Shown in pieces: positions 2,615-30,168 of a stretch of DNA of 30,996 nucleotides. A program made the position numbers and the translations under genes. This DNA is from Fonticula alba ATCC 38817 (Eukaryota > Protista > Nucleariida). The stretch lies in NCBI GenBank assembly GCA_000388065.2, contig KB932201.1; one strand, written 5' to 3'. The notes under the pieces were generated by a model. It did no database searches and was not told the DNA's origin. It was given only the letters and a program-made list of their open reading frames with translations. The first letter of the stretch is position 1, and every line of letters begins with the position of its first letter.

Positions 2615-3240
2615 CGCTCCCGTGTCGCGCGTCACATGCACCCCTCCGGGTCAAGCCGCCAAGAGGGCCTCTTCACAGGGGGCAGGACATTTTCCTGTGT
2701 GGTGTGCCTCGCGCCAAAGGGGCGAGGGCAAGCGTCCGTGTGTTGTGGGGAAACAAAAAAAGACACCCAACCCCGGCCCCTAAGCCACCCGCAATCCTCG
2801 CCCCATGCCCGTTCATGGCTGTGTCATGGTGTGCCCAGCTTCTAACATTCCCCTCTCCGCGCATTTGCCTGCCTGCCTGCCTGCTCGGTGCCCAAAAAAA
2901 AACAAAACAAAACAAACACCTACTCCCCCCCCCCCACGGCCCTCCCCGGCCGTGGCGCTCCTCCCGTCACATCTCCACCCACAGCCCGCCTCTCATTCCG
3001 GCGGCCTGGACCGGTGTTTCTGCCCCCCCCTGCCCCCAGACCGCCGGCATTTGGCCTGTCCCCATTCTCCCCCCCCCTCCCCGTGGCCTTCTCACTCCGA
3101 CGCGGAACTCTCGAGTCCGTGCGTGAATCGCCACTTGTGGTCGGGCCCGGGCCGATCCCCACCACCACCCCCCTTCCTGCCACACAATGGGACGTCTCCC
3201 CCCTAGGACGCTCCCAGGCAGTCTGCCCGGGGCCGGCACC

Positions 3241-6200
3241 ATGATGAGTGCCGACCCTCGGGCGGACGCCCACGAGGGGAGCCACCTGGCGGTAGCAGAG
3301 GCTCCGGCACCCCGGTCGATGGACCGGCGCCGGCGCCGGACGCCCGCCCCCGGTGCCTCTTCCCCCGTCTCGGTGCTGTCCAGCCTCCCCCTGAAGCTGG
3401 CCATCCTCGCCCTTGTGACGCTGCTGAGCGTTATTTTCGTGACCCCCAGCGGCAGCGGCCTTGTGGCCGCCGCCCGCCATGGTGCCGGTGCCACCCATGC
3501 CACCAGTGACATCCAGTTCGACATTGCCCCATCGGCCAAGCAGCAGCCCGCCATCCTGCCGGAGGAGGAGGACGGGCCGGCGGCCGGCCTGCCGTCCATC
3601 GACCTGTCCGCCCCGAGCATCGCCGGGGTTCGGTTCGCCCGGCCGACCTTCTCCGCCCAGGAGGATGCCGGCCATATCATGATCACCTTCCTGCGCCAGG
3701 CTGTCGATGCCCAGCCTCTTGACAGCCAAGTCGTGTATCTGTCCATTGCCGAGGATACCGCCGTCGAGAGCTTCGACTATGAGTCGCCCTCGGATCTGGT
3801 GCGTTCGTGTGGTGCCGAGCGCATGCCCCGGCCTCTGGGGCTCTTTCCGCCCCCCCCCCCCCCAGCAGGCCCCTCTTGTGCGAGGGTGCTGCCGGGACAT
3901 GCTTGCTTCCTGCGCGCCTCGCCCTTTTGCCGCCCTTGGGCGGGGCTTTTTTGTCCCTGTCCGCCTCTTCGGCCCGGTCCCGCCCCTCGCGCGCGCGCCC
4001 CCTCCTGGTGGCCCTGCCTCGTGCACCAAATGCCCAAGGAGGCGGGCCGCCACGGGACGAGACACCGGCGACAGCACCGAGCGCGCGCGCGCGGAGGCCC
4101 CTCCGGACCACCCCCCCCCGTACAACACCCCCGTGACTGACCAGCCACATTCCCCCCCCCCTCCCCCACACACACATAGGCCGTTCGCTTTGGCAAGGGC
4201 GAAGTGGTGGCCATGAAGCGCATTCGCCTCTTCGACAACTATTGGCCCGATGGCACGCGCCGGGCCATCCTCCGTCTGTCCTCCAGCGAGGCGGGCCATG
4301 CCCTCGGGGATGCCGACGTGTCGGCCATCCTGGAGATCACGGACGACGAGCCGGCCGAGGCGGTGGCCCCGGCCTCAGGGATGGCCGGTGACGCGGCCGG
4401 TGGCCGGCGCCACGGGCCGCGCGACCTGGAGGCCGAGGCCGAGGAGGCCTCGCCGTACATCCGGTTCTTCGGCCGGGCCGTGGCCACGCCGACCCTGGTG
4501 ACCACCGAGGAGCCGACCACCACCAGCACCACGACCACCGAAACGGCCACCTCCACGCCGACCCCGACGCCGACCGTCACCCCGACCGAGGCCCCGTGCG
4601 AGCGCGGCTGCGATGGCGAGTGCGACTCCGGTGCCGTGGTCGACCGGTGTGGTGTCTGCCGCAAGATCGATCCCAACCAGCCGTCGGACGGCCCGTCACC
4701 GGTGGAGGATTGCGCCGGGATTTGCTACGGCCAGGCCTTCATCAATGAGTGTGGCATTTGCGTGGCCGGGTCCACCCAGAAGGACCCCTCGGCCGGGAAG
4801 GACCAGTGCGGCGTGTGCGGCGGCGATGACACCAGCTGCGTCGGCTGCGATGGGGTGCCCAACTCCGGAGTGGAGAATGACGCCTGCGGCGTGTGCGGCG
4901 GCGACAACTCCACCTGCATCATCCTGCTGGAGATCGACCCCGACGTCGGGCCCAATGCCCCGGAGCAGCCGGTGCAGCTGATCGGCGGTGGGTTCACCGA
5001 GCCCGGCACCGACAAGCCGCGGGAGCTGTACTGCCGCGTGCAGGACAACAAGCAGGCCCGCATCCCGGTGCGGGTCATCAGCAACACTCGCGGTGAGTGC
5101 ATCCTGGACTCCTTCACCTCCACCGGGCCCAAGGACTTCGAGCTCATTTGGGTGGAGAACCCCGGCGACCCGGGGGTGGCCGTGCCCAACAAGCTGGTGT
5201 ACACGGTGCTCGAGCAACTGCCCTCGATCGTCCTGGACCAAGTGGTCAAGGTGTACATCGACCGCACCGACCAGCGGATTCTCGTCAACGGCACGAACTT
5301 CTTCGACCCGGACACCCTGCCCGGGGGGAATGGCGGCCATCTGATCTCCTGCCGGTATTCCTACGACGGGGAGGCCGGCATGGAGCGCGTGTCCTATGCC
5401 CGGTACATCAGCTCCAAGCAGATTGAATGCCCGGTGCCGGTGTCCAGCGTGTCGCAGGATGCCTGGCTCACGATCGGCTTCTCCGGCCGCCCTGGCGGGC
5501 CCTGGTCCACGGTCAAGGTGTGGGTCAAGTACTACCAGGTGGCCCCGGTGGCCGAGCTGGCCCGGTTGGATTCCACCGGGTCCCTGCTGCTGGTGTACTT
5601 CAATGTGCCGGTCACCACCCCGATGAATGGCCCAGGGCTGGACTCCGGGCCCGGGGCCGGGACCTTCAAGTGCCAGACCTTCTTCCCGGCCCGGACTGCC
5701 GAGCTCTTTGGCTCCGGGGCCAAGTGCACGGTGCGCTCCGGCTCGCGCGTGGTCGAGGTGGCCCTCGGCCAGAACCCGGCCATTCGCACCGGGGTCACCA
5801 TGATCCTCTTCGAGCGGGAGACCATCTACGAATTGGCCCGCCAGTATTGCGACCCGTTGGACAATGATCTGTTGGTGGACACGGACACCCCGCCGCCGGT
5901 GCCGGTGGCCGTGATCACCGCCCCGGAAGAGGCGTCCACCTGCGGCGCGGTGCACATCCACGGCCGGGCGTCCTACGGCAACACCGGTGGCCAGGCCCTG
6001 CGCTTCCATTGGACCTTCAGCCCGCCGCTGCCGGCCGGCTCCTACACCACCAACAACGGGGCTTCGCTCGACTCGCTGACCGTCACCGACATTCACATCA
6101 AGAAGGATGTCTTCGCCAATGGGGCGGTCTTGCGCATCACCCTCAAGGTGTCCAACTATGTGGCCGAGTCCCTGGTGGCCGAGCACACCATCCGCTTTGT

Positions 6201-9200
6201 CAACAGCCCGGTGCCCAGCATCACCGTGCGCGGCATCAACCCCCGGCGGGTGAACATCGACGAGGAGACCGTCATCGCCATGGATGCCACCCCCTCCGAG
6301 TGCGATGCCACCGACACGGCCCTCTCCTTCGAGTGGACCCTCACCCCGGAGGACTTCCAGAATGGCCATTCCCTGTCGGAGCTGGTCCTCACCGGGCCGA
6401 CATTGGTCATCCCGCCGAACTTCCTCCAGCCATACACCCAGTACACGGCCACCCTGCGGGCCACCTCCGACAAGTCCAAGGCCACCAGCAGCCACGGGGT
6501 CATCCTCAACACCCTCCCCCCGTCGCTGAATGTCCGTCTGCTGGGCGGCGACCGCCGGACCATCGGGTCGTACTCCGATCTGCACCTGTACTACACCATC
6601 GCCGATTATGCCCGGCTGGAGGGCCGCGAAGTGACCATCGAGCTGCGCTGCACCAACGAGCTGAATGGCGCCCTCTGCCCGGTGACCGATGGCTTTGGTG
6701 GCTTCACCACGCTGTCCTTTGCCCCGCAATCGGTCACCCTGGACCCGGCGCTGGAGTCCAACCGCTTTGTGCGGGTGGTGCCGGCCGGGCAGCTGGTTGT
6801 CTCGGAGAAGCTGCGCTATCGCTTTGAGCTGCGCGTCACCGACAACCTGACCGGCGAGCTGAAGACCGATGTGGCGGTGATCGTGCCGCGCGCCGGTGTG
6901 CAGCCCTTCGTCCTGCTGGACACCGAGCGCAAGATCGGCGCCCGCCATGACTGGCCGCTGGCCATCACCGTGGCTTCCAGCCGGTCGACCGCCTATGCCC
7001 AGCTCAATTACACCTGGTCCTGCGTGCATGAGACCACCGACCAGGAGCTGGCCCAGCTCCTGCGCGACATCGATCGCCACAGCGAGCTGCACCTGGAGTG
7101 GGTGGACATCAATGACCCGGCCATCCACTCGGGCCCGATCAATGGCGATACCCTGATCCTGGAGCCCTTCACCCTGCGGCCCAATGCTCGGTATGCCTTC
7201 CGCCTGGATGTGGTCGAGCCGCAAACCAACAAGCGTGCCCATTCGATTGTCATTGTCCGGACGTCGCCGGCCCCGGTGGGCGGGTCCATCAGCGTCACGC
7301 CGGCCGTCGGGGCCCGGGCCGCTTTCGACCTGGTGCAGGTGGCCATGACCGGCTGGACCACCACCACGGACCAGCTGCCCTTGTCCTACCGCGTGGAGCT
7401 CCGGTACCCGGATGGCCGGACCCTGCAGGTGCCGACCGATGGCCCGGGCTCGGCGCTGGCCTTCCTGGCCGATCCCGGCAACCGGTCGCGCTCGGTCACC
7501 GTGCGCGGCGTGGTCACCCAGCGCAATGGCGTGTCGTCGGTGGTGCAAACCGACGTCGTGGTGGACAGCTGCGTGGTCCGGACCAACAGCGAGCTCGAGG
7601 AGCTGCGCGACATCTACCGGACGCGCTCGGCGCAGATGGTCCAGCGTGGCCAATGGGAACGCCTGATGGCCTGGACCTCGGTGGTCAGCAGCTGCCTGGA
7701 TGCCACGGAGAAGTTGGCTCGGTCCCAGGCGGCGGCCATTGCCAGTGCCAGTGCCGCGCGCCGGGTGGTTGAGCAGGCGGCGACGCCGGCCACCGGCGGC
7801 GGCCCGGAGGCGGCCACCACCCACATCCCGGATGAGGTGCTGGCTCGGCGTGGGCGCCGGTCGGAGGTCGGGGAGGCCCTTGCCGCGGCCGACACCGCGG
7901 CCCGGCTGGCCACCGCCGAATCGGCCGCCGGCATCGACACCACCGGCATGAACTCCGCCGAGGTGGAGGCCCTGGACTCGGCCCTGGTGCTGGCCAACTC
8001 GGCCAAGCTCCTGCTGGCGGATGTGGTGGTCACCTATGACGACAGTTTGAACTTCGCCCCGAGCTCCTTCGAGCGTGCCCAGGCGGCCATGTGCCAGATT
8101 GACACGGTGTCCCGGACTTCGCGCGGCCTGTCCCAGGACATGGTCGGGCGTCTGGTCACCCGGATGACCGAGCAAACGCGCCTGGTGGAGTCGTACTACC
8201 AGGCGCCGGTGCGCCGGGCCACGTCGGCCGCCGGCGGATCGGGCGCGGCCACCACCCCCCCGGGCGGCAGCAACAACGCCGCCCCCGGGCCCGCCACCCT
8301 GGCCCGGGTCCACCCGAATGTCATGGTTTCCGATGACTTCATGAACTGCCTGGCCCGCTCGGGCGGCCGGCTGCTGACGGTCACCAACTCCACCTCCACC
8401 TCGGAGAGCCTGCTGCAAACGACGTCGGCCATTCGCCGGGCCCAGCACATGTATGCCCGGCGCCTGGCGTGCAACCAGGAGCCGGCCACCTTCCCCTCGA
8501 TCTCGGCCGATGAGGATGACCTCGGGGCCGAGGCCGTGCAGATGACCGTGGTTCGCAGCCCCCTGAAGGGCAGCGACTCGCTGATGCCGAGCTTCACCTT
8601 CCCCCAGGGCTTCGGCGTGGAGGGGGTCAATTGCTTCTGCGGCTTCCAGGCCACCCTGGATCGGGATGCCTATGCCAGCGTGCCGCTGCCGATCGGCGCC
8701 ATGGCGGCCGGATCGCGCGAAACCTTCGGCGCCCGCGTGCGCCGTCACCTGCTGCTGCAGTCGCGCTCCCTTTCCTCGGCAATGGCCCCCGGCGATGGCG
8801 CCCATGATGACCACCGGGGGGCCCGGACGGCGTCGGTGGCTGCCGATGCGGCCGGCCTCATGGCCGGGCTGGTGGATCTCGGAGCGCACTCGCTGCGCTC
8901 GGCCACCCACCAGGCCCTGGGCTACTTCGAGGAGGCGGCGCACCAGGTTCGCCGGCTGCGGTCCCTGCGCTCGGCCACGCCCGACACCGAGGGGGCCGTC
9001 GCCGCGGCCGACACGGCGGCGTCCACCACCGCCGCGTCGTCGACGATGGCCAGCTCGGCCGCGGCCGTGGGCGGTGGCGGCGGCTCCGACGCCGGGTCCT
9101 ATCACCTGGCCACGGCCATCCACTCGGCCGAGCTGTATGACTGCTCGACCCCGTCGGCCATCGGCGAGCCGGACACCTTCGGCCAGACGCCGATCACCTC

Positions 9201-10071
9201 CTTCGGCGGGCAGGTGGTGCAGGTGGGCTTCGAGTTCGACCCGGCCGACCCGGTGGACATCGGGTCCGTCGTGTGCGCCTACCTCAACCACACCACCTAC
9301 AAGTGGGACTCCAGCCAGGTGTTTGTGCTGGAGGCCACCCCGGTGTCGGTCACCTGCGGGGCCCAGCACTTCACCGAGTTCGCGGTCCTCCAGCGGGCCA
9401 CCGCGTCCGAGGTCTTCACCCCGGACCTCGGGGACCTGTTCCCGGCCTGGGCCATTGCCCTGATTGTGGTCAGCGCCCTGGTGGTGCTGTCGGCCCTGGT
9501 CATCGGCATGTATGTGGTCCACCGCCGGCGCCAGCTGGCTGCCGTGCCGCCGACTCCCTCCGAGCCGGGCAGCCGCGTGGTCGACTACAGCACCATGGCC
9601 GATGGCCAGGGACAGGGTCTGGGCGCGCCGCCGGCCTTCAAGCCGGATGGCAGTGCCTACCCGCCGGGCTCGACCGCCGGGCCATCGACCGCCGGCACGC
9701 CGCTCTCGCCCGACCACATGGTCCGCCGGCCGCCGGCATACGTCCTGCCGCCGTCGTACGCGGACTTCGTGGCCGTCGGCTACCAGGGCCCGGGATCCGG
9801 AGGCTCGTCCTTCGGGCCGAGCCCCACCTCGGCGGCCGCCGGTGTCGGCGCGCCCGGGGTCAACGGCACCCCGCTCTACCCGAACCTGAATGCTCGCTAT
9901 CAGGGAGGCGCCGAGTACAGCTCCAACAGCTTCGAGGACTTTGTCTCGGACGAGGACGCCTACGACGACGAGAACTACGAGGATTACGAAGACGAGCGCG
10001 ACTACCACGACGACGACGACATCTACGACGACGACGACGACTTCGAGTCGGACGGCGGGATGTCCGAGTGA
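3241..10071 (+). CDS. Large adhesion-receptor-like membrane protein, about 2149 aa (polycystin-1/adhesion-GPCR-like ectodomain, single C-terminal TM); exons 3241-3798 and 4180-10071
   Basis: The phase-0 intron 3799-4179 (GTGCGT...CATAG) joins DYESPSDL|AVRFGKGE and rebuilds a Calx-beta-like domain (VRFARPTFSAQEDAG...AILEITDDE). Other elements: hydrophobic signal/anchor LAILALVTLLSVIFV (3397-3441); Thr/Pro stalk (~4495-4590); Cys repeats DxCGVCGGDxxxC (~4597-4917); IPT/TIG-like repeats (~4920-5540); PKD/REJ-like beta region (~5900-7560); GPS motif C..W...TCGAQHF/TEFAVL (9274-9390); TM 9448-9519 followed by HRRR; PPAY/PPSY; D/E/Y-rich C-terminus. Strong G/C third-position bias. An alternative start is ATG 3319 (MDRRRRR). 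Confidence 0.9.
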
Positions 10072-10077: not shown

Positions 10078-10780
10078 GCGCGCGCGTGCGTGATAATCGA
10101 GTCACGACGAAGACGACGACGAAGACGACGACCAAGACGAATGAGCATGTATGTGTGTGTGTGTGTGTGTGTGTTTATAAGTGTGTGTATGTGTGTGCGT
10201 GTGCGTGTGCGTCTGCTCGTGAGGGTGTGTGCGAGGGGCACCAGGAGACACAGCGTGTGTGTGTGTGTGTGTGAGTCTAAAGAAGAGGGACACGGAGAGA
10301 GGCGCAGGCGAGTGCTCTTGCGTGTGTGCACTTGCTTTGCGCGCCTCTCGCGCGCTCTTCGGCCTCGCTCCTCCGTCTTCCCGCCCGGGATCGCGTCATG
10401 CTTCCATTCTCTTGGCCACCCCCGCGCCTCTCCCTGCCCTGGGAGGCGGTGTGGGGGGGTGAGGCCAGGGAGCGAGGCGTGGCGACAGAGAAGCGCGCAC
10501 GTGAAGGCAAGTCTGTGCCTCCGCATGGGCCCCCGCATGTGTCGTCTCTCCTTCGCGCGAGCGCTTGTGGAGGTGAAAGCACGAGTGTGCGAGGCATGTG
10601 TGTGTATGTGTGTGTGTGTGCGTGTGTGCGAGCGTGTGTGTGCGCGTGTGCTCGTGATGAGGAAAGTGGTTGCGTGTCTTACTCGCCTCTCTCTCTCTCT
10701 CTCGTTCGCTCGCTCGCTCGCTCGCGCGTGTGCGCGCGTACGCGCACTCACGCACACACGCACGCCTAAACACACACAGG
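10078..10780. repeat. Cluster of simple repeats (GAC/GAA, GT, CT, CGCT) in the probable 3' UTR/intergenic region
   Basis: GACGAC(GAA) runs at ~10105-10140, several (GT)n runs at 10152-10275 and 10597-10645, and (CT)n/(CGCT)n at ~10688-10725. Confidence 0.85.
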
Positions 10781-12173
10781 TGTGACTAAGAGCGACGGAT
10801 GAGCCGCCAAGAGAGAGCGGTCCGGCAAAAAAAGGAGGGCCGATGCGTGTCGTCCTCACGTCGTCGTTCACCACACGGCGCGAGGAAAGAGAGGGACCGT
10901 GAGAGGATGATTCACCTGGAAAAAGAGAACGTCCTTGGCCACATTGGCGTGTCCTCCCCCCTTCCCCCTCCCCCCTCCCCCCGACGGCGCCCCGCCGTGT
11001 GTGCAAGGGCGTGCGGAAGCATCCAGCTCTGTCACGCTGTGTGTGGGCGCCAAAGGGGCGCGATGGAGGAGGGACGACCGGGGCAGCACACAGGGACGAG
11101 AGCAAGCACGCGGCGCAGCGCGAAGCAGAGCAACGGCGCGCGGCAGAGAGAGGCGTTGGCGGCGTTGTGTGCGAGCGCAAGCATGTGTCATCAGCACATT
11201 GTACCATAGTCTGCTCGCATCGCCCCGCGCCATCACGCAGGGTGTTCGCACCTTCTTCCGCACCCCGTCGTCTCTCCCCCCTGTGTTTGTCCCTCCCCGG
11301 GCCTGCCTGTCCCTGTCACCGCGTCCCCCGCTCTCCTGCCCATGCTCCCGGGTGCTTCCTCCGCTCCTGGCTGCGATGCCGCCCGCTCCCGCACCTCCCT
11401 TCTTCACACGACGTGTCCCCTTCTACGCCATATCCAGTCGCACACATCCATGCACGTTTGCTTCGCNNNNNNNNNNCCCGGGGGCGGGGGGCGCGGCGCG
11501 GAGGCCCGCGACCGCCAGCATGTGGCCCGCCCGGGTGGCGCGGCCCGAGGGGGCGGCCGCCGCGACGCGGCATTGGTCCCCCCAACCCGGGGGGGGGGGG
11601 GGCCGCCGAGGGCGACGCATTAGACCGCGCCCCTGGTCCGGGGAAAACGCGGGGCGCGCGATCGGTGGACCGGGCTGCCGGGCCCCGGGCGGGCGCATTC
11701 TTCCGCGCAAACACCCCCCCCCCCCCCGCGGCCGCGAAACATATGAGCTGATTGGGCAGCGCCGCGGGCGGGCACGAACGCATCCGCCGGCCCCCGTTGT
11801 GTCGGACGACCGGGTCGCCCTTGGGCGCGTTGCTCCGGCGGGCGGGCGCGGCTCGTCGACGTGCGCGTGTGCATGTGTGTGTGTGTCGGTGCGTGGGGGC
11901 GCCGGTCTATTTGCATGTCGGTCTTCTGGGTGGTCGGGGGGGGGGGACGTGGCCACGCGTGCGCGCGGCTACACATTCGGGGCGCGCCCCTCGCCTCGGT
12001 CGACGCGGCTGGGGGACGAAATGTTGCCCAGCCCCTCGCGAAGGCCGCGAGGGGGGGATATCCCCGGAAAGGGGCTGCCCCTTCCAGGTGGGGCGCTCGC
12101 CGGGCTTCTGCGCGCCCACAGACACACCCAGTCACACGCGGCCCGAGGCGAGCCATGTGAATGGGCAGGGGGG

Positions 12174-13023
12174 NNNNNNNNNNNNNNNNNNNNNNNNNNN
12201 NNNNNNNNNNNNNNNNNNNNNNNNNNNNNNNNNNNNNNNNNNNNNNNNNNNNNNNNNNNNNNNNNNNNNNNNNNNNNNNNNNNNNNNNNNNNNNNNNNNN
12301 NNNNNNNNNNNNNNNNNNNNNNNNNNNNNNNNNNNNNNNNNNNNNNNNNNNNNNNNNNNNNNNNNNNNNNNNNNNNNNNNNNNNNNNNNNNNNNNNNNNN
12401 NNNNNNNNNNNNNNNNNNNNNNNNNNNNNNNNNNNNNNNNNNNNNNNNNNNNNNNNNNNNNNNNNNNNNNNNNNNNNNNNNNNNNNNNNNNNNNNNNNNN
12501 NNNNNNNNNNNNNNNNNNNNNNNNNNNNNNNNNNNNNNNNNNNNNNNNNNNNNNNNNNNNNNNNNNNNNNNNNNNNNNNNNNNNNNNNNNNNNNNNNNNN
12601 NNNNNNNNNNNNNNNNNNNNNNNNNNNNNNNNNNNNNNNNNNNNNNNNNNNNNNNNNNNNNNNNNNNNNNNNNNNNNNNNNNNNNNNNNNNNNNNNNNNN
12701 NNNNNNNNNNNNNNNNNNNNNNNNNNNNNNNNNNNNNNNNNNNNNNNNNNNNNNNNNNNNNNNNNNNNNNNNNNNNNNNNNNNNNNNNNNNNNNNNNNNN
12801 NNNNNNNNNNNNNNNNNNNNNNNNNNNNNNNNNNNNNNNNNNNNNNNNNNNNNNNNNNNNNNNNNNNNNNNNNNNNNNNNNNNNNNNNNNNNNNNNNNNN
12901 NNNNNNNNNNNNNNNNNNNNNNNNNNNNNNNNNNNNNNNNNNNNNNNNNNNNNNNNNNNNNNNNNNNNNNNNNNNNNNNNNNNNNNNNNNNNNNNNNNNN
13001 NNNNNNNNNNNNNNNNNNNNNNN
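12174..13023. other. Assembly gap (850 N). Other gaps: 1099-1404, 11467-11476, 15390-15773, 18192-18201, 18774-18783, 20451-20460, 27104-27113, 29874-30073
   Basis: Runs of N read directly. Confidence 0.99.
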
Positions 13024-13867
13024 GGGGAGGAATGGCGCGGCCGGAGGGGGCAACCGCACGCGGCGGTTTGCATTCGCCCGCCGCCCGGACGGGGAGCACC
13101 GGCGCTTCTTTGCCGGCCACGCCCCGGGTGCGCCGGCTCGAATGCGAAACCCGGCCAATGGGCGTGCGCCACCGGCGTGGCCCGCCCCCCCCCCCCCCCG
13201 GAAGACGCGGGCAGGGGGGGGGGGCCGGTGATGTTCACGCCACGGGCAGACACACACACACGCACACACAGACACACGGAGACGCCGGCAACACGGGCCC
13301 CGCGCGATCCGACGCGGCCCCGGCGCCGGGGAAGGGCGCATGCGTCCGAGGGCCCCGGTCACACCGGTTTTCCGGCATGGCGGTCTTAAGTCATCCCGGG
13401 GTGGGGGGCTCCCCGCCGGGGGGAGCGGCTTGCGTACCCGGGCGCGACGTCCGCCAGCCGCGGAGGCCACTGTCCCCGGGGGAACATCAACAAAAACCGG
13501 GGTGGTCCCCGCCTCGCCCGACCGTGTGGGCCCAGGGGAATTAATGCCCTCTCTCCGGGCGGGCAGCCACCATCCGCGCTCCATGATGCCAGCGTCGCCT
13601 GGGGAGATAAGGGGGCTGGCGCGGAAGGTGACGCCGACGCCGGGCGGGTTTACACATTCTCCACACGCGCCCGTGGTGGCCCTTACAAGCGGGCCACGCC
13701 CCGCCCGTCCGCCTGCCCGGCAGCCGATCCCCTGAGGGGGGAGCCGCGGGAAGGCGAAACACGGCGCCCGCCGCCCGCCCCCCCCCCTTCGCCCTCTGGT
13801 CGTGCGTTGCCCCCCGGTTCTTGGACCGCCGGCCGGAGGGGCGGCCACTCTGCTCTCCCGCCCCCGA

Positions 13868-14023
13868 GAGACCCCGCCAACCGAGAGGGGGACGCACGCG
13901 CGCGCGCCCCTCCCCGGCAATCGGTCGGGTCGTGCCTGCTCCAGGCCCCGCCTGCCCTGCCGATTGCCGGCGCCGGCGCCGGCGCGCGCGCGCGTGCGTC
14001 CCCCTCTCGGTTGGCGGGGTCTC
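13868..14023. repeat. Long inverted repeat / foldback: 40-bp perfect arms plus an 11-bp inner stem
   Basis: 13868-13907 is the exact reverse complement of 13984-14023. 13914-13924 (CCGGCAATCGG) pairs with 13960-13970 (CCGATTGCCGG). The loop is 35 nt (13925-13959). Confidence 0.9.
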
Positions 14024-17000
14024 CCGGAGGGGGGACGACCTCCCGCCAAGCCGTTTTTTTCTCCGCGCCCGGCCGTGACGCACTCACACGCGCGTGCGCG
14101 CACGCCCGCGCGCCCGCATGGGGAGCGCGTCGCCAACGTCCCCCCCTCCCTCGCGCGCGGGGTCGCCTGGCGAAATCGGGCGCGCCCAGCCCGGCCCAAA
14201 AGGGACCGCCGGTGCGCCCACATGCACGCGCCACACCCCCCGGCCGGGGCTGCACCCTGGGGGGCCGTCGGCGCGAACAAGCGACCGCCGGGATCCGCCG
14301 CACAGCCCCAAGAACGACATTCCCGCCGGCCCTTCCACGCGTTTGCCGCGGCCTCCTCCGGGGCGGGGGGCCGAGTGGGCGGGCGCCCGGCCGGCCGCGC
14401 CGCGGCCCGCACGGGGGACGCCCGCGCGTTGGCAGCTTCGCCCGGCCGGTTGGGCGCGCGAGGGGGAAAAAGTGGCCACGGTGAGACGTCCTGCCGACAC
14501 GCCTGGATGCCGAGCCCCCCCCAGGGAGAGAGAGAGAGAGAGAGAGAGGCACACACACACGCTCGTACGACGCCCGTCTGGGACGCGCCCGGGGCGCCCG
14601 AACCGGCGCCCGAGGCCACGGCAGGGCCCGAGATCCGGCGGCCCACGCCAGGGGGGGGGGGGGGCTCCCGCGCGCCGCCGGCACAGCCCCGCCCATGACT
14701 GGCGCCGATCCCGGAGGTCGACCCACCGGCAAGCCGGCGAACATCGCCATCATCCCCCCCCCCCCCCCCGGCTCCCCTCGGGGCGAAGACATCCCCGGTC
14801 GAGGCCTGCCCGGTCCCCCGTGTCCAAGGGCAGGCAATCCAGAACATTTGTCGGCCTGCCCGGCGAAGAGGAGCCCCGAGGGGCGGCCGCCCGAAAGGGC
14901 TGCCACCCTCGGCAAAAGGCAGCGCGGGGCGACCGCGACCAGCCGGGCACAGGGCCGAGAGAAACATCTGCCGAACGGCCTCCTCCCCCCCCCCCGGGGG
15001 GGGGGGGGCCGGGGGACGGGCGTTTCGCGCCGACTTTGCGTCCGCCCCCCCTGCCCTTCGCCCCCGCCCCCCCCCCCCCCCTCCCCGCCGCCCCTGGCCG
15101 GCGGCATCCTGCCCGATGGCCTCCGCGCGGTAGTTGTGCAGGCATACCGCGCGAGAGGTTGCCTCGCAGCTGGCCGCGCGGGCCGCCCCCACCTGGACCC
15201 GTGTCGTGCGCCCTCCCCACCACCAGCTGGGGGGGGGGGGGGGGCCGTCCAAAACGTGTCGCCCCTGCCTGTTGACCGGCCGGCGGGCCGCTCGCCGGCG
15301 CCCTTTTCCGTGGCCCACCAAGCCCCAGGGCGCCGGGGGGCGGTGGCGGCGGCGGCGGCGGCGACGACGGGCCTCGGCCGGGCGTGCGCNNNNNNNNNNN
15401 NNNNNNNNNNNNNNNNNNNNNNNNNNNNNNNNNNNNNNNNNNNNNNNNNNNNNNNNNNNNNNNNNNNNNNNNNNNNNNNNNNNNNNNNNNNNNNNNNNNN
15501 NNNNNNNNNNNNNNNNNNNNNNNNNNNNNNNNNNNNNNNNNNNNNNNNNNNNNNNNNNNNNNNNNNNNNNNNNNNNNNNNNNNNNNNNNNNNNNNNNNNN
15601 NNNNNNNNNNNNNNNNNNNNNNNNNNNNNNNNNNNNNNNNNNNNNNNNNNNNNNNNNNNNNNNNNNNNNNNNNNNNNNNNNNNNNNNNNNNNNNNNNNNN
15701 NNNNNNNNNNNNNNNNNNNNNNNNNNNNNNNNNNNNNNNNNNNNNNNNNNNNNNNNNNNNNNNNNNNNNNNNNCCCCCCCCCCCCCGGGGAGAGAGAAGA
15801 GGGCGGCCCCACATGTCGCCGGCGGCGTCTTGCCCTGCCGGATGCAACATCGGCACGCCCGGCCCATACCTGCGCACCCCCTGGCTGCCCCTGGGCAACA
15901 TGCGCCGCGGGCCCCCGGGACCTCGCGTTGCCAGCGCCCTGATGCCGGCCCGCGCCGGCCAACGTGCCGCCCGGATAGGGTGCGCCCTGAGCGGCGACCG
16001 GGCCCGCACGGCCAGCCGCCCTGGCCCGGCATGCCTCCGAAGTCAGGGCACCCCGGCCGATCTTCCCGTTCGCCCTGTTGTTCGGGGGACGCCCGAGCAG
16101 GGCCCCATGCGCACGAGTGTTTTCGGACAGGGGGCGGGCGAGCGGACGGGTGAGCGGCCGGGGGGAGGGGGGGGCCGGAGACAACGGCGCGTCCCGAGCC
16201 CGGGCCGGCGCCGCCCCTCCCGCGGACGGCTCCAAGAAGCCAAACAACAGCGCCGATCCCGCCAGACCCGCCATACACACACATACATGCGCACGAGTGC
16301 ACGGGCACACACGATCGTCCCCGAGGCGGCCGCGATACGCGGCCCGGATTCCGGGCCCGGTCCACCGGAGATCCCAAAGAGGGACGGCCCTTTGCTCCCC
16401 GAGGGCTGGGGCCCCGCCGCCGCCGCCGCCCGCCCGCCCGCCCGCCCACACACACACACACATACACAAACGAGATCGCCGCCCCCGGAGGCCGATCGGC
16501 GGCGGCGGCGGCCAGCACGCCGTCCGACACAGGCGAAAACACCACGCCCCCCCGGGGGCCCCCCCCCCCCCCCCCCCCCCCCGCCCCCTGCCACACTGCC
16601 GCCCCTGGCCCTTTCTCACTCGGGCGGAAGGCGGCGAAAACTTTCTCTCTCTATTTCACTTCTTCCTTGCCTCTCTCTCTCTCTCTTTCGTGCGGCTGCG
16701 CGCATGGACACGAGCGCCGGAGAGGGCAGGGAAGGGAGGCGCGCGCACAGTCCCCTCTCGTCGATGTGTGCCCGTGCGCGCGTGTGGATCGACAACAGAG
16801 GCAGGAAGAGGAGCAGGAGGAAGAAGAAGGGGGGGGGATGGGAATACAAGGGGCCTATGAACCGAGAAGGCGCTGCTCCGCGCCGTCCTCGAGAGTCCGG
16901 GGGAAGAGACGGAGGGGGAACAGAGGGCATGGGAGAAGGGGAGAGAGCGAGCAAGCCAGGGAACAGGGAGGGAGGGAGGGCCGCAGGCCGGCCCCTGCAC

Positions 17001-17465
17001 ATGTGTGGGGCGGGGGACGAGGAGCAGAGGGAAGCCCCGGCACAGCAGGCGCACACCGCCAACGGGGCTCACACTCAGACCCGCGCGCGGCGCCCCTGGC
17101 CAGTGTGCGCCCTCCTTCCCCCCGTCCCATGAAACAGGGGAGGCGGCCGGCAGGGGGGTGCGCGCGCACCCGAGCCCCACGCACACGGGACAGGGGGAGG
17201 GCATAATAGCGGGAAAAAGAAAGAAACCGAAAGGAGGCTAGTAGAAGGGCGAGACACGGGAGGGATGGTCGCACGGACACACACACACACACACACACAC
17301 ATGCAAACACCCCTCGGGCGTGGCGCTGCTGCGACCTTGGTCGGCTGAGTTTTGCCCGGTGTTCCCCCTCCGCACCGGGGTCCCCTCTCTTTCTCTCTCT
17401 CTCTCTTTCTCTCGGGCTCGCTCTCTCGCTGCTCATGCGGCGGACAGCATCTCCCTCACTCGCCC

Positions 17466-19839
17466 TTACGCCGTGGTGTAGCCATCACCCCGGGGGAGGG
17501 CGCTGAACTGGTGGTACACCTCCGTCAGGTAGGTGATCATGGAGAACTCGTCCCCACCGGCGGCCAGGTCATCGGCGTCGATGAGCGGGCGAATGCCATG
17601 GGTCCGGGCCGCGTCGAAGGCCAGCTGGATGCGCTCGACATTCGAGGCACAGGCCTTCACCTTGCTCCAGGGCAGCAGATCCGGCCGGTACCGGTGCACC
17701 ACCGCACACAGGGCCATGCCATCGGTCCAGGAGTTGGAGAAGTCCTCGATGCCCCCGGCCAGGGGGTACCCATCGGCCGCCTGGCGCGACCAGGCCATCA
17801 GGGCCTGGCGGCCGGACAGCTTGGTCCCGGGAGCCGGCCCGGAGGAAGTCCCGGCCGACGACACGCCCAGGATCGACATGGCCTGGTCCAGGGACGACGA
17901 CCCGCTGGCCGAGGCGGCGGCGGCGGCGGTGGGCTTGGCCGCGCCGAGGGCCGGCGACGCCTCAGCCGCGCCGGAGGCCGCGCGCGCGGCGGCCAGCTCC
18001 TCCAGACGCTTGTTCGCCTGGCGAGTGTGCGTCGTGCACATGAGGCGGTCCGGGGCGCCGGCGGTCTCGGCCGGCACCCGACCGAAGGTCGAGGCCATCA
18101 GCGGCCGGCTGCAGGTGGCACACTTGAAACAGCCATTCTGTCGGACGGGCCCCGCACGCGGGAGAAGAGAGAGAGAGAGAGGGGGGGGGGGNNNNNNNNN
18201 NCCCCCCCGGCCCTCCCGCGATCCCCGGAAGGGCAAGATAGTCCAGGTCCCGCAGGGCGATTATCGTGGCCCCGCGCCATCGGTAAAGGGCCGCACGCCG
18301 GACCGGCGCGCACGGCCGCGGCTGATTACGCGCCGCCCGGGCCCTCAGCTGAGCTCGCATCCGCCAGGCGACCCGGGGAGAAATCCAGCCACCCGAGCCC
18401 GGGGCCGGGCGGGCGAGGGGGGCGAGACAAAGTCGGCCCCGGCATGTTGGGGCTTTTGCGCGGGGCCCCCGGGCGCCCGAGACCCGCCCGCCCGCCCTGG
18501 GACGGAGCCACAAAAGTGGACAGGCGCGCCGGGTCCAGAGCCGCGCGCGCGACTTTCTCGTCCCCTCCGCCGGTCGGCCCCTGGGGGAGAGGAGCCATGA
18601 CGCGCCGGCGTGCCGGCCCCGCCGCACGCACATCGCACATCGCAACGCCCCAGGAGAGCACCCCCGGCCGGGGGCATCTGCCGGCCAGGCGCGCCTCCTT
18701 TGCGGCCGGCCGGCCGCCGACGCCCGAAGCCCGGGTCTTTGGGGCGAGGCGGCCGCCCCGCCCCCCCCCCCCCNNNNNNNNNNGGGGGGGGGGGCACAGG
18801 GCCAGGCGCCAAGAAGGAGGAGAAGAAATGCAGGGCAAGGGCGTGAGTCCAAGAGCAGGGGAAAAGAGAAGGAGAGCAACAGAGAAACAGGAAGACGGAG
18901 GCAGAGGCGGCCCCCTGGCGACACGCACGCGATGCACAATGATCTCCTCATTAACTTGCAGGCGATCCGAGATGAAAACCTTCTTCTGGCACACGAAGCA
19001 GGGCACGGTGCCAGTGAGCGGCTTCCCGGGGCTGGCCACCGGGGCGGCCGCCAGCGGCGTCGGAGTCCCGAGGGAAGTGACCAGCGGGCTGCTCGGGGTC
19101 GAGGACCCGCCGGTGGTGGTGGTGGTGGTGGTGTCGGTGCTGCTCCAGCGAGAGCTGGCCCGCGCGGTGCTGCCCCCGGACGACGACGAGCCGAGGGAAC
19201 TGGTGCTCGGCGACCGGGACGCACCCGGCGAGGAGGAGGCGCTGCTGCTGGTGCTGCTGGTGCCGCTGCGCAGGCGCGACGGGTCCAGCGAGTCCGAGAA
19301 GGCGCCACCCGCGGACATGCCCGGGCTGCTCGGGGCCACGAAAGAGCGCCCGGTGATGGCGCTGCCACCGGTGAACCCGCTCCGGGCCAAGATGTACCCG
19401 GAGGACCCGGTGGAGGCCTGCTGCTGCTGGCGACGCTTGCGGCGCTCCTCGCGCTCGCGCTCGATCTCCTGCCGCAGGCGGGCCTCCTCGTCCTCGGGCA
19501 TGGACCCTGGGGCCGGGCTCGCCGGGGCTGGCGACTCGAGCGTGCGCTCAGTATCAACCATTGGGGATGCGGGCTCGGGCTCAGGCTCGGGCTCGACCTC
19601 GGGCTCGGGCTCAACCTCGGGCTCAGGCTCGGGCTCAACCTCGGGCTCAGGCTCGGGCTCAGACTCGACCTCGACCTCGACCTCGGGCTCGACCTCGGGC
19701 TCAGGCTCGGGCTCAGGCTCAGGCTCAACCTCAGGCTCGGGCTCGGGCTCGGGCTCAACCTCAGGCTCAGTCACCTCGGGAACAGAGGCGACGACGGGGG
19801 ACGCAGGATCGGAGGCCAGGGGCGAGGCAGGGACGGAGG
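17466..19839 (-). CDS. LIM and calponin-homology domain cytoskeletal adaptor (MICAL-like/smoothelin-type CH) with an N-terminal EP repeat; exons 19839-18929 and 18137-17466, 5' end unresolved
   Basis: The phase-0 intron 18928-18138 (GTGCGT...ACAG) joins [24 protein letters not shown]|NGCFKCATC...LMCTTH into a complete LIM domain. The C-terminal CH domain is ALMAWSRQ...[26 protein letters not shown]...IQLAFDAA...[11 protein letters not shown]...[12 protein letters not shown], with stop TAA at 17468-17466. There is a candidate acceptor at 19842-19840 (TAG). The first in-frame ATG in this exon is 19561. A possible upstream mini-exon is 19964-19949 (weak donor GTCTCA). Confidence 0.85.
19571..19777 (-). 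repeat. Coding hexamer tandem repeat (GAGCCC/GAGCCT/GAGGTC/GAGGTT) encoding (EP)n with interspersed EV
   Basis: Read directly. The translation is [16 protein letters not shown]..., and variation falls mostly at third codon positions, consistent with coding use. Confidence 0.9.
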
Positions 19840-20237
19840 CTATTGGCCAGGAAGGGCGAGACGGGGCGCGGAAGATCGCGGACACAGAGGGCGGGGGGAA
19901 AAGAGCGAAGAGGACGCGAGGGGGAAGAAAAAAAAAGCAAGGTGAGACTATGGCGGGAAGACATCGAACGGCACAAGGCCAGGCCCAAATAAATAGGCAA
20001 ACAATTAAAGAAAAGAGAGAGAGGGGGGGAGAGGTCGGAAGAAGGGGCCGGGAGAATTAACACCCAGAGGCCCAGGCTGCTCGCGACCCCCAGCTCCCTG
20101 CCTCACGGAAGGAGGGGAGGGGGGCAGCGAGGACAGGGGACCAAGGCACAGGGCGAATATCCGCCACTCTGGCCCTCGCGACAAATGACACACAGCACAG
20201 AGAGGAGGAAGGGGCCCCGGAGGAGGGAGGACAGAGG

Positions 20238-20942: not shown

Positions 20943-22824
20943 CTACATGGAGCAGCGATGTGCCTGCTCACGAGCAAAGTCAATGTCGAAGGGAACCAAA
21001 ACACTGATGCTCGGGCCTCCAATCGTGTCCCCGGGCCGGGGGGATTTCTTGCCGAGGAGCTCGGCCAAGCGGATATCCGCCTCGGAGGCCGGAGCCTGGG
21101 GCATGGTCTCGACAAAGTGCCACCAGAAAGCCGGCGTGTAGATGGCATCGCCCGGAGCCACACGGGCCACAAAGCGCTGGACCTCCTCCAGGCGCCGGTA
21201 CTCGGCCCGAGCTGGCGGGTCAGCTGCCAGCCAGCGATCCAACGGGGCCTGCCTGTGGGGATTGATGCGAGGGGGGGGGGGGGGGGGGGGGGAGGGGGGG
21301 GGGGGGAATGTGGACATGCAGGGAGGAAGGTGGACGGGGGGTGAGACAGGCGAAGGCAGATGCCGAGAGAAAAAAAGAGAAGAGGACGGGGCGACAATCG
21401 GCCGGAGAGGTGCCCAACACAGTATTTCCACGCACGAGGAGTGTCGATTCGGGTCCAGCGGGCTGGCAGGGTAGAGGTTCTGATAGTCATCCGGATTGAA
21501 GACACTCCAGTGCTTGTCGCCGACGATCTGGAGAGGCGAAGTGAGCGGGCGTGTCAGTGGCGGGCTTCCGGCAATCCGGGACCAGGGGCCAGTCCCCCCC
21601 CCCGCCCCCCGCTTACACACGAGAGCGGGAAGGTGGGAATGGAGGGAGGCGGGAGGGAGGAGGCCGTCAGCCAGGGGAGGGACACGTACCTGAATGAGGA
21701 ACCCATGGCAGAGGTCAAAATGCAACGGAGTGATGTTGCCCCCGCAGCTGATCCAGATGCCGCAGTTCTCCATCTTGATGGCTTTGGCCAGCGGGAGCAG
21801 CCAGGAAGGCAGGACGGAAAAGTGACCGTCAGCATGTGCCAGCCAAGTGGGGCATGGCCAGGGACAAGAGGAGAGGGGATTGGTGGAAGGGGGAGAGAGG
21901 GGACGGGAAAAAAAAAGGCAGAGCAACAGCGCACGCGTATCAATCACTTCCTGCGGCAGGTCCAGGTCCCGGGCGAAAGCCTCCTCCAGCGGCAGGCGAG
22001 CGTAAATCCGGGGGAGGGCCTCGCGCACCCGGGCGGCTTCCGGGGTTTCGCCCGGCGTGCCGAAGATCCGATCCACCACCTTGCCATAGGGCCAGGTTTC
22101 CTGGACGCAGAGGGCCTTCTTGAAGAAGAGCCGGTTGTCCTTGGATACCAGGACTTCCACCGGCGTGTCCTCCGGCAGAAGAGCTCGAAGGTAAACCGGG
22201 TCGCGCCACTGGCCACGAGGAGGAGTCACGGTTGGCCGGGGCAGAGCGGCACACGGGCACACCGGAGGGAGGTCCCCAAGTCAGCGAAAGGCGCGAAAGA
22301 AGAAGAGGCAGGATGAGTGGCCGAAAGCAAGAGCAGCCAGCTGGCGAGCTGGCGAATTGGCGCCCCGACGGGCATGGGAGTCGATGGGCCGGCGCACCCT
22401 TTCGACGGCCACTGAGGCATCTACGAGTCCCGACCAGATGAAGGGCCTCCGATGGCGGTATGCCTGCTCGAAGAGTGCTCGGTCCAGGGCCGGGCCATCG
22501 GCCGGGCTCCGGGGGTGGCGAATGGTTGCCATGCCCTTCAACGCGAGGCACTGGGGATTGGGGACCGAAAAGCCGTGGTCTGCGAGGGCCAGGGTCAGCA
22601 AAAGGCCGGGCAGGGGACCAGGAGGCGGAAGTGCCGCATGAAGAGACACCCGCAGGGAGAGCGGCCCATGTTGACGCACCGATGACCGGCAGGCCGGGGA
22701 CCTCGATGCCGGGCGGGGCAGGCAGCCGGTCGGCATCGTCCACCAGGGGGGCCTTGTCCGTGGCCTTCGAGGAACCGGCGCCGACGGAGGAGAAAATAAA
22801 GTCGAGAATGTCTTCAGACTCCAT
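20943..22824 (-). CDS. JmjC / cupin_8 family 2-oxoglutarate-Fe(II) oxygenase (FIH/JMJD5/JMJD7-like), 364 aa; exons 22824-22680, 22579-22398, 22208-21935, 21781-21690, 21527-21436, 21252-20943
   Basis: Five GT-AG introns with consistent phases (1,0,1,0,2) give 1095 nt in total. Motifs: RPFIWSGLV..AVERW..YL (JmjC N-terminal part), IWISCGGNITPLHFD (HxD), QIVGDKHW (2OG Lys), PGDAIYTPAFWWHFVE (distal His). Confidence 0.9.
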
Positions 22825-29457: not shown

Positions 29458-29806
29458 GGCTGCGGTGCTGCTACTGCTGGATGGCAAGGAGAAAGAAGAG
29501 GGGGGACTCCGAAAGGGAAGGCCGGAGACGGATGGCCGAGGGGACGGAAGGGAAGCCGCCTCGAGAAAGAGAGAGGAAGGGCAAGAGAGGGAGGGGAACG
29601 GAACAACTGGCAAGGAAGGCAGGGAAGTGGGAGAGGAGCGGATGGAAAGAAGGACAGAGAAGGGGGGATGCACTTTGCAAAGATTGGCCCGGGGCTGCGA
29701 AAATGCCGCCACGGTGCCATAAGAACATGCGGCACTGACCGCCGCCCGGGGAGAGGAGGGCCTACATTGCTGGATGTTCCTGGCCGACATGCATCGGGCT
29801 GGCGAT

Positions 29807-29851
<45 letters not shown>

Positions 29852-30073: not shown

Positions 30074-30168
30074 GTCCAAAGGCACGGGCATGCGAGCACC
30101 CTCCCAGGGGGGGGGGCCGACATGCCCCTCCCCGAGGGAGCGCGCGAACGCAAGACACACAGACAGCC
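30074..30168 (+). repeat. 95-bp dispersed duplicate, copy 2 (identical to 20356-20450)
   Basis: Exact match, starting immediately after the 200-N gap. Confidence 0.9.

What the first reader, a model, noticed from the sequence alone, without database searches (positions are those of the whole stretch)
3241..10071. Single-pass adhesion receptor combining Calx-beta, ADAMTS-like Cys repeats, IPT, REJ/PKD and a GPS site
Seen: domain-like motifs in this order, ending in one TM helix and a ~180-aa tail. Established: Calx-beta plus GPS occurs in ADGRV1, and REJ plus GPS occurs in polycystin-1, but those proteins continue into 7 or 11 TM segments. Inference: this is a non-animal, self-cleaving, calcium-sensing adhesion or mechanoreceptor with no GPCR or channel module, possibly a new receptor family relevant to aggregation or substrate sensing.
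Basis: partly seen in the sequence, partly recalled or inferred. Interest (0 to 1): 0.75.

Follow-up and report, generated by a model that had tools for sequence, protein, structure and literature searches.

The report
Single-pass REJ-GAIN surface protein of Fonticula
This slime-mould-like relative of fungi has one gene for a very large cell-surface protein that joins the outer, probably self-cutting part of the kidney-disease protein polycystin-1 to a single membrane anchor, which suggests this outer part may predate its link to channels or G-protein receptors.

Summary
The gene is real and matches the public model H696_00598 / XP_009492752.1 of Fonticula alba: 2149 aa, exons 3241-3798 and 4180-10071.

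Confirmed:
- REJ domain (Pfam E 7e-28).
- A borderline GPS hit with an HF/T site. It is solid in family context: orthologue 34 bits, family profile against solved adhesion-GPCR GAIN regions E 1.5e-13.
- A modest AlphaFold model whose best Foldseek matches are GAIN domains.
- An IPT-like array (plexin/MET top hits).
- ADAMTS-like CGVCGG cysteine repeats (borderline).
- One TM helix and a 183-aa tail.

Not confirmed: Calx-beta (no HMM or PDB hit), so calcium sensing has no support.

Six-frame searches found no PKD channel, PLAT or class-B 7TM module, and no paralogue; controls were blank for PLAT and 7TM. There are no TM-like exons in the 7 kb downstream.

The architecture is not unique. Three unnamed close relatives share the core and a conserved PPxY-plus-acidic tail. 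A second unnamed group carries MYND-finger tails. Dictyostelid proteins have TIG-PKD-REJ-GPS and one TM. Sea-urchin SpREJ1/2 have one or two TM.

Verdict: an undescribed non-animal variant of the REJ-GAIN (PKD1-type) kind, already auto-annotated. Cleavage and signalling are inferred only.

The parts
3241..3798 (+). Exon 1 (residues 1-186): arginine-rich N-terminus, hydrophobic signal peptide or signal anchor (residues 49-69, nt 3385-3447), and the first half of the Calx-beta-like stretch (nt 3613-3798)
   Evidence: Translation; hydropathy peak 2.51 at residue 49; identical to P0001; no Calx-beta HMM hit
3799..4179 (+). Intron, 381 nt, GTGCGT...TAG, with in-frame stop codons and C-rich tracts
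   Evidence: Sequence and three-frame translation; removing it gives exactly the public 2149-aa protein
4180..4356 (+). Second half of the Calx-beta-like stretch (residues 187-245); domain identity unproven
   Evidence: Resemblance by eye only; no Pfam hit at E<=10, no six-frame hit, no Calx-beta hit in the PDB
4498..4596 (+). Thr/Pro-rich mucin-like linker (residues 293-325)
   Evidence: Read directly from the translation; the equivalent linker is present in P0004
4597..4917 (+). Cysteine-rich region with four CGVC/CGIC-type repeats (16 Cys, residues 326-432), ADAMTS cysteine-rich-like
   Evidence: ADAMTS_CR_3 20.4-22.7 bits against cut-off 21; ADAMTS5 and ADAMTS13 PDB hits; conserved in P0004 and P0006; AlphaFold confidence is low here
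4918..5787 (+). Three predicted beta-sandwich domains (residues 433-530, 537-637, 644-722), an IPT/TIG-like array
   Evidence: AlphaFold pLDDT 50-85; Foldseek top hits are plexin A1/A4/A2 and MET IPT arrays, E 1.7e-8 to 1e-6; colinear with the Pfam TIG domain of P0006
5959..7677 (+). REJ region with weak PKD-like repeats (residues about 780-1352)
   Evidence: Pfam REJ 97.8 bits, E 7e-28; six-frame hits at window 5995-6519 and 6934-7677; 30-32% identity to P0002 and P0003 over this span
7831..9396 (+). GAIN-like domain (residues about 1404-1925): a helical part, then a beta part broken by long low-complexity inserts, ending in the GPS motif (residues 1884-1923, nt 9271-9390) with the putative cleavage site His1916-Phe1917/Thr1918 (nt 9367-9375)
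   Evidence: Pfam GPS 17.3-24.3 bits; C1885, W1895, C1912 and H1916 invariant across 11 proteins; Foldseek top hits are GAIN domains, E 6e-5; VIA gives BAI3 Z 9.7 and CD97 Z 8.5; family profile against adhesion-GPCR GAIN regions E 1.5e-13
9448..9519 (+). Single transmembrane helix (residues 1943-1966)
   Evidence: Hydropathy peak 2.89; apart from the N-terminal signal segment, the only other window above 1.5 is a marginal 1.57 peak at residues 1453-1472, well below any usual TM cut-off
9520..10071 (+). Cytoplasmic tail (183 aa) plus stop codon: PPAY and PPSY motifs (residues 2037-2046, nt 9730-9759) and an Asp/Glu/Tyr-rich C-terminus
   Evidence: the paired (P/L)PxY motifs and the acidic end align in P0002 and P0003; WW domains are present in the genome

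Best explanation
The gene encodes a roughly 2150-aa type I (or signal-anchored) surface glycoprotein of Fonticula alba.

Architecture. The outer part carries binding-type modules: an unproven Calx-like stretch, a mucin-like linker, ADAMTS-like cysteine repeats and an IPT array. These sit on the REJ-GAIN juxtamembrane module that is typical of polycystin-1-family proteins. A single TM helix follows, then a tail with two PPxY motifs and an acidic end.

Most likely working (inferred). The GAIN domain cuts itself between Phe1917 and Thr1918 in the ER, as in polycystin-1 and adhesion GPCRs. This would leave a large N-terminal fragment held non-covalently on a stub of about 230 aa made of the last beta strand, the TM helix and the tail. 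Binding or pulling on the outer fragment would change or remove it. The stub would then be read through its tail, most plausibly by WW-domain proteins such as Nedd4/Rsp5-type ubiquitin ligases, which would control its endocytosis or turnover. There is no 7TM or 11TM body, so no tethered-agonist pocket is involved.

What is shown and what is inferred. Shown here: the gene model, the domain order, the single TM, the family relatives and the conserved tail motifs. Inferred: cleavage, topology, the adhesion or force-sensing role, and WW-domain binding.
For: - Gene model identical to the public protein.
- REJ at E 7e-28.
- GPS motif with invariant Cys, Trp, Cys and His, and H-(L/F)-(T/S) in every family member that keeps the motif.
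- GPS above the Pfam cut-off in orthologue P0003 (34 bits) and in the short fragment P0039 (34 bits), and 40-51 bits in the dictyostelid proteins.
- Family profile against solved adhesion-GPCR GAIN regions, E 1.5e-13.
- In the AlphaFold model, helices are followed by a beta part, and the HF/T site lies in the turn before the last strand. Foldseek's top four matches are GAIN domains.
- Only one TM after the signal segment.
- No TM-like coding sequence in the 7 kb downstream.
- The orthologues end in the same way, with an acidic tail.
- Six-frame searches of the genome found no PKD_channel, PLAT or 7tm_2 hit.
- The paired (P/L)PxY motifs are conserved in three proteins, and WW domains are present in the genome.
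Against: - The GAIN model is weak overall: mean pLDDT 51, with the ordered parts at 70-85. TM-scores are low (0.22-0.33), and helical-repeat proteins score as high as GAIN domains in the VIA second look.
- The protein's own GPS score is below the Pfam cut-off when the whole protein is scored.
- Only 2 of the 4 canonical GPS cysteines and one tryptophan are kept in the Fonticula-type subgroup. Many GAIN domains with an intact motif are known not to cleave (my own knowledge).
- Long low-complexity inserts interrupt the beta part.
- There are no expression or protein data.
- PPxY motifs are short and can arise by chance in proline-rich tails.
- The absence searches are six-frame first-look scans whose controls also found nothing for PLAT and 7tm_2.
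Confidence: 0.6

Rival explanations
1. It is a structural adhesion or matrix-anchoring glycoprotein. The GAIN-like domain would be an uncleaved stalk, and the protein would simply tether cells to substrate, bacteria or the secreted stalk matrix, with no signalling role for cleavage.
For: Half of the GPS cysteines are lost. Long disordered inserts sit in the beta part. The ectodomain has a mucin-like linker and IPT and Cys-rich modules typical of adhesion proteins. Uncleaved GAIN domains exist in solved structures (BAI2 in the uncleaved state, listed).
Against: The H-(L/F)-(T/S) triad is kept across very distant relatives. That conservation is hard to explain if the site were unused. The tail motifs are also conserved.
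Confidence: 0.25
2. It is a calcium-sensing receptor acting through an N-terminal Calx-beta domain.
For: By eye, residues 125-245 follow a Calx-beta-like spacing: a DY pair, then a GE pair, then alternating hydrophobic residues.
Against: No Calx-beta hit at E<=10 in Pfam on the spliced protein or on either exon piece. No six-frame hit in the genome. No Calx-beta hit in the PDB. Where calcium-binding Calx-beta domains carry an acidic cluster (my own knowledge), this stretch reads Asp-Asn-Tyr-Trp-Pro-Asp-Gly. The close relatives found are all cut short before this region, so its conservation could not be checked.
Confidence: 0.08
3. It is the regulatory partner of a separate TRPP-type channel, as polycystin-1 is for polycystin-2 and as proposed for sperm REJ proteins.
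For: The REJ-GAIN module is the hallmark of PKD1-family proteins that pair with PKD2-type channels (PMC1934368).
Against: The six-frame HMM search found no PKD_channel and no PLAT hit in the 31-Mb assembly. The protein has no 11-TM body with which to assemble.
Confidence: 0.05
4. The gene model is cut short. A multi-pass PKD1-like or GPCR body would be encoded in exons lost in the assembly gaps downstream.
For: The draft assembly has runs of N at 11467, 12174-13023 and 15390-15773.
Against: The frame ends in a stop codon after an acidic tail that aligns with the ends of P0002 and P0003. No hydrophobic coding segments occur between 10072 and 17300 apart from translated GT repeats. Relatives from three other groups also have a single TM.
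Confidence: 0.04

Closest known systems
[quoted passage not shown]
   Same: A large glycosylated surface protein with a REJ domain that lacks the 11-TM body and has only one or two TM segments (PMC1934368). The outer part consists of binding modules placed before the REJ domain.
   Different: SpREJ1 carries an EGF domain and C-type lectin domains, not Cys repeats or IPT domains. It is an animal sperm protein. No direct sequence comparison was made here. The Fonticula tail motifs (PPxY, acidic end) are not described for it.
Polycystin-1 (PKD1) and PKD1-like proteins
   Same: A REJ domain directly followed by GAIN/GPS with an H-L/T-type site next to the first TM. Cleavage of polycystin-1 is reported to require the REJ domain (cited in PMC4890752).
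   Different: This protein has no PLAT domain, no 11-TM body and no channel-like region. Six-frame searches for PLAT and PKD_channel in the genome were also blank.
Adhesion GPCRs (latrophilin, BAI, CELSR, CD97)
   Same: A GAIN-like fold and GPS motif. The strand after the putative cleavage site reads T-x-F-A-V-L, like the tethered-agonist consensus TxFAVLM quoted in PMC12716839.
   Different: There is no 7TM domain in the protein, and the six-frame 7tm_2 search of the genome was blank, though its control was too. The strand therefore cannot act as an agonist for its own receptor body. A REJ domain lies upstream instead of HormR.
Dictyostelid 'GAIN-B / IPT-TIG domain-containing' proteins (D. 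purpureum XP_003286850, Cavenderia fasciculata XP_004359431)
   Same: TIG, PKD-like, REJ and GPS domains, then one TM and a tail of about 200 aa. Arac et al. 2012 reported a GAIN domain in D. discoideum (PMC3321182), but that protein was not linked to these two here.
   Different: They carry GT4 and GT2 glycosyltransferase domains at the N-terminus, have the full four-cysteine GPS, and lack both the Cys repeats and the PPxY tail. Identity to the Fonticula protein is low (E about 1e-5).
Unnamed relatives P0002, P0003, P0004 and the P0006 group (public assemblies, organisms unknown)
   Same: P0002 and P0003 share REJ, GPS, one TM and the (P/L)PxY-plus-acidic tail. P0004 shares the Cys repeats, IPT region and REJ, and is colinear at 28% identity. 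P0006 shares Cys repeats, TIG, a REJ-like region and an HL/T GPS motif with one TM.
   Different: The P0006 group has a tail of about 500 aa with a MYND zinc finger instead of PPxY. None of these proteins is named or studied.

Membership tests
PKD1 / polycystin-1 family | REJ domain | tested here: met
   Pfam PF02010 97.8 bits against cut-off 25; also found in the six-frame search
PKD1 / polycystin-1 family | GPS/GAIN directly before the first TM | tested here: met
   GPS at residues 1884-1923, about 20 residues before the TM. Borderline on its own (17.3-24.3 bits) but supported by the family profile and the fold
PKD1 / polycystin-1 family | PLAT/LH2 domain after the first TM | tested here: not met
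   No PLAT hit in the protein or in the genome (though its control genomes were also blank). The tail is only 183 aa and of low complexity
PKD1 / polycystin-1 family | 11-TM body with a channel-like region | tested here: not met
   One TM by hydropathy; no PKD_channel hit; no TM-like exons downstream
Adhesion GPCR | Class-B-type 7TM domain after the GAIN domain | tested here: not met
   One TM; no 7tm_2 hit in the protein or genome (control blank)
GAIN domain (autoproteolytic) | Helical subdomain followed by a beta subdomain that ends in the GPS strands | tested here: met
   The AlphaFold model has seven helices, then strands, with the site in the last turn. Foldseek's top hits are CELSR1, CIRL1, BAI2 and BAI3 GAIN domains. 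Model confidence is modest (mean pLDDT 51)
GAIN domain (autoproteolytic) | His-Leu-Ser/Thr-type cleavage triad | tested here: met
   His1916-Phe1917-Thr1918. H-(L/F/M)-(T/S) is kept in all 11 aligned proteins
GAIN domain (autoproteolytic) | Four conserved cysteines and two tryptophans of the GPS motif | tested here: inconclusive
   Only C1885, C1912 and W1895 are present in P0001, P0002, P0003 and P0039. The dictyostelid members keep all four cysteines
GAIN domain (autoproteolytic) | Actual self-cleavage | not testable with these tools
   Needs protein expression and a blot
Calx-beta domain proteins | Match to the Calx-beta profile or fold | tested here: not met
   No Pfam hit at E<=10, no six-frame hit, no Calx-beta hit in the PDB. 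The fold of the intron-split domain was not predicted
IPT/TIG domain proteins | IPT-type beta sandwich | tested here: met
   No Pfam TIG hit in P0001 itself. The model's top matches are plexin and MET IPT arrays, and the colinear segment of P0006 has Pfam TIG at E 3e-12

The most novel reading that the evidence does not exclude
REJ-GAIN single-pass proteins would be an old, widespread amorphean receptor type. They are seen in Fonticula and its unnamed relatives, in dictyostelids and in a third unnamed eukaryote group. In this type, GAIN self-cleavage and shedding of the outer fragment would signal through a simple one-helix stub with a docking tail, in a Notch- or mucin-like manner. The self-cutting force-sensing module would then predate its fusion to 7TM (adhesion GPCRs) and to 11TM/PLAT (polycystin-1).
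Probability: 0.25. Interest if true: 0.7.

Novelty: new variant of a known kind. Interest (0 to 1): 0.45.

Why it matters
GAIN domains are studied almost only as the front ends of adhesion GPCRs and polycystin-1, where the cut exposes a peptide that switches on the multi-pass body.

This protein offers a different case. It is a holomycotan protein with the REJ-GAIN module, the conserved cut site and even a TxFAVL-like strand, but only one membrane helix. Six-frame searches of its genome found no polycystin channel, PLAT or class-B 7TM.

Together with the dictyostelid and unnamed relatives, this points to the REJ-GAIN pair being older than either fusion. It also gives a simple system for asking what GAIN cleavage does without a receptor body.

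Fonticula and dictyostelids both aggregate, so a role in cell-cell or cell-matrix contact is worth testing. Nothing here shows such a role.

Tried and rejected
- **Calx-beta.** I scanned the spliced public protein and both exon pieces with Pfam at E<=10, ran a six-frame genome search and ran PDB sequence searches. None gave a Calx-beta hit.
- **Exon joining.** The joined Calx-like domain has no reference of a permitted size, so it was not folded.
- **Word search.** The search with residues 560-1800 found only the protein itself. The exhaustive representatives search was needed to find relatives.
- **Organisms of the relatives.** The organisms and full gene models behind P0002-P0004 and the P0006 group therefore could not be found. 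Cluster look-ups gave no names.
- **Paralogues.** None was found in the genome.
- **Literature.** No paper names this gene or its accession numbers. No paper links Fonticula to polycystins in a relevant way.
- **Neighbouring ORFs.** Pfam scans gave only a Cupin_8 hit at 20943-22259.
- **First genome search.** It failed for a technical reason and was repeated.
Full report
**Source and gene model**

The window is GC-rich draft eukaryotic DNA with several runs of N. Earlier notes of this scan name the genome as Fonticula alba. The word search confirmed this: the product is 100% identical to hypothetical protein H696_00598 (P0001, 2149 aa; KCV73051.1 / XP_009492752.1). UniProt A0A058ZGG6 calls it a 'PKD/REJ-like domain-containing protein'.

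Reading the DNA gives this model:
- Exon 1: 3241-3798.
- Intron: 3799-4179, 381 nt, GTGCGT...TAG, with in-frame stops.
- Exon 2: 4180-10071.

The sum, 186 + 1963 = 2149 aa, equals the public protein. Where a whole-protein query was needed I used the public protein by its id, and otherwise I searched exon by exon. The joined Calx-like stretch has no reference of a permitted size, so it was not folded.

**Domains confirmed**

- **REJ.** Solid: Pfam 97.8 bits, E 7e-28, in two stretches. The six-frame genome search also found it.
- **Cysteine repeats.** Residues 326-432 hold 16 Cys in four CGVC/CGIC-type units. They match the second half of the ADAMTS_CR_3 model at the cut-off (20.4-22.7 bits against 21) and match ADAMTS5 and ADAMTS13 chains weakly. 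The repeats are conserved in P0004 and P0006. AlphaFold could not model them with confidence.
- **IPT.** No Pfam TIG hit in this protein. The model of residues 313-779 shows three beta sandwiches at 433-530, 537-637 and 644-722, with pLDDT 50-85. Its best Foldseek matches are the IPT arrays of plexin A1/A4/A2 and MET, at E 1.7e-8 to 1e-6. The colinear segment of P0006 has Pfam TIG at E 3e-12, and P0008 and the dictyostelid proteins also carry TIG.
- **PKD.** Weak only: K319L-like at 12.5-16.4 bits. The family profile does reach KIAA0319L PKD domains at E 4e-8.
- **Membrane segments.** Hydropathy gives two clear segments. One is an N-terminal signal or anchor at residues 49-69, after an Arg-rich stretch. 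The other is a single TM at 1943-1966. A third window, at residues 1453-1472, only just passes the 1.5 reporting threshold (peak 1.57) and is not TM-like. The tail is 183 aa.

**Calx-beta is not confirmed**

By eye, residues 125-245 have a Calx-beta-like spacing. Every sequence test failed:
- Pfam gives nothing at E<=10 on the spliced protein or on either exon piece.
- The six-frame genome search is blank.
- The PDB sequence searches give no Calx-beta hit.

Where calcium-binding Calx-beta domains carry an acidic cluster (my own knowledge), this stretch does not. The calcium-sensing reading therefore has no support.

**GPS and GAIN**

The GPS hit at residues 1884-1923 is borderline on its own. 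It scores 17.3 bits in the whole protein, 20.7 bits on a 260-aa piece and 24.3 bits in the six-frame search, against a cut-off of 22.5. Context makes it convincing:

- The orthologue P0003 scores 34 bits, as does the short fragment P0039. The dictyostelid relatives score 40-51 bits.
- In an 11-protein alignment, C1885, W1895, C1912 and H1916 are invariant, and the site reads H-(L/F/M)-(T/S) throughout. In this protein it is His1916-Phe1917/Thr1918.
- A profile of that alignment hits the GAIN/GPS regions of solved adhesion GPCRs: ADGRL3 at E 1.5e-13, then ADGRF1, G6, G1, B2, latrophilin-1, CELSR1 and BAI3. That profile is partly driven by the more canonical members.
- The AlphaFold model of residues 1350-1975 is modest (mean pLDDT 51, ordered parts 70-85). 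It shows seven helices and then a beta part, with the HF/T site in the turn before the last strand.
- Foldseek's four best matches are GAIN domains: CELSR1 at E 6e-5, then CIRL1, BAI2 and BAI3.
- In the VIA second look, BAI3 reaches Z 9.7 over 235 residues and CD97 reaches Z 8.5 over 144 residues at 4.2 A. Helical-repeat proteins score as high on the helical part alone.

I therefore take the GAIN fold as supported but not proven. Two departures stand out. The Fonticula-type subgroup keeps only two of the four canonical cysteines. Long low-complexity inserts break the beta part.

**Nothing multi-pass**

- The frame stops at 10069-10071, after an acidic tail.
- The next 7 kb hold no hydrophobic coding segments apart from translated GT repeats.
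- Six-frame HMM searches of the 31-Mb assembly found no PKD_channel, PLAT or 7tm_2 hit. The controls for the last two were blank, so those absences are soft.
- REJ and GPS occur only in this gene, and there is no paralogue.

**Relatives**

The exhaustive search of 1.84 billion representatives gave only 42 hits at E<=0.001.

- **P0002 and P0003** (about 30% identity, N-terminally cut) share REJ, GPS, one TM and a tail. In that tail a paired (P/L)PxY motif and an acidic end align with the Fonticula tail.
- **P0004** shares the linker, Cys repeats, IPT region and REJ, colinear at 28% identity.
- **P0006** has Cys repeats, TIG, a REJ-like region (aligned by BLAST and phmmer, though Pfam REJ did not hit P0006 itself), an HL/T GPS motif and one TM. 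Its tail of about 500 aa carries a MYND finger. At least ten related clusters exist.
- **Dictyostelid proteins** (D. purpureum, Cavenderia fasciculata) have glycosyltransferase domains, then TIG, PKD, REJ, GPS and one TM.
- **Other hits** (P0012, P0015, P0016, P0031) continue into several TM segments, like PKD1 proteins.

**Comparison with what is known**

- Arac et al. 2012 noted a GAIN domain in Dictyostelium discoideum and called the domain ancient (PMC3321182).
- The 2025 eLife survey places the GAIN-7TM fusion in stem holozoans. It also notes non-GPCR proteins with HRM domains in Fonticula (PMC12716839).
- No paper held in the library names this gene.

The protein fails two defining features of the PKD1 family (PLAT and the 11-TM body) and the defining 7TM of adhesion GPCRs. 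It is best filed as a single-pass REJ-GAIN protein, closest in plan to SpREJ1.

**Mechanism**

Shown: the architecture, the single TM, the conserved cut-site triad and the conserved tail motifs.

Inferred:
- Self-cleavage at Phe1917/Thr1918.
- A non-covalently held outer fragment.
- Read-out of the stub through its PPxY motifs by WW-domain proteins, which the genome encodes.
- A role in adhesion or force sensing.

The strand after the cut site resembles the adhesion-GPCR tethered-agonist consensus. With no 7TM pocket to receive it, this most likely reflects the fold's core rather than agonism.

**Verdict**

This is a real, single-copy gene that is already auto-annotated. It encodes an undescribed non-animal variant of a known kind. 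It is of moderate evolutionary interest, and its function is untested.

Noticed in passing
P0023 and P0028 (D. purpureum XP_003286850; Cavenderia fasciculata XP_004359431): In the dictyostelid REJ-GPS single-pass proteins, GT4 and GT2 glycosyltransferase domains are fused in front of the TIG-PKD-REJ-GAIN ectodomain. This is an odd topology for sugar-nucleotide enzymes, and may be a gene-model fusion.
   Followed up: no
P0006, P0048-P0057 (unnamed public assemblies): A group of at least ten protein clusters has Cys repeats, TIG, REJ, an HL/T GPS motif and one TM, with a cytoplasmic tail of about 500 aa that carries a MYND zinc finger. The source organisms are unknown.
   Followed up: partly
window 10100-10700 and 11800-13300: Long GT/CA microsatellites and C-rich tracts fill the region downstream of the gene. 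Translated, they produce false 'hydrophobic' ORFs. Runs of N lie at 1099-1404, 12174-13023, 15390-15773 and 29874-30073, plus several 10-N gaps.
   Followed up: partly
window 20943-22259 (-): An ORF has a Cupin_8 (JmjC-like) Pfam hit, E 9e-16. The other long ORFs tested (17352-20057 +, 27553-30171 -, 13683-15389 -) had no Pfam hit and may be artefacts of high GC content.
   Followed up: no
model md79ba305dd2d against PDB chains 8glv_AE and 9fqr_Hn: Two axonemal doublet-microtubule proteins align across both the helical and the beta part of the GAIN-like model (Z about 9, 230-242 residues). That is as long as the GAIN matches. I did not establish what these chains are.
   Followed up: no
window 3187-3240: An in-frame ATG lies 54 nt upstream of the annotated start, and a further in-frame Met sits at residue 27. 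The true start, and so the length of the stretch before the signal segment, is uncertain.
   Followed up: no
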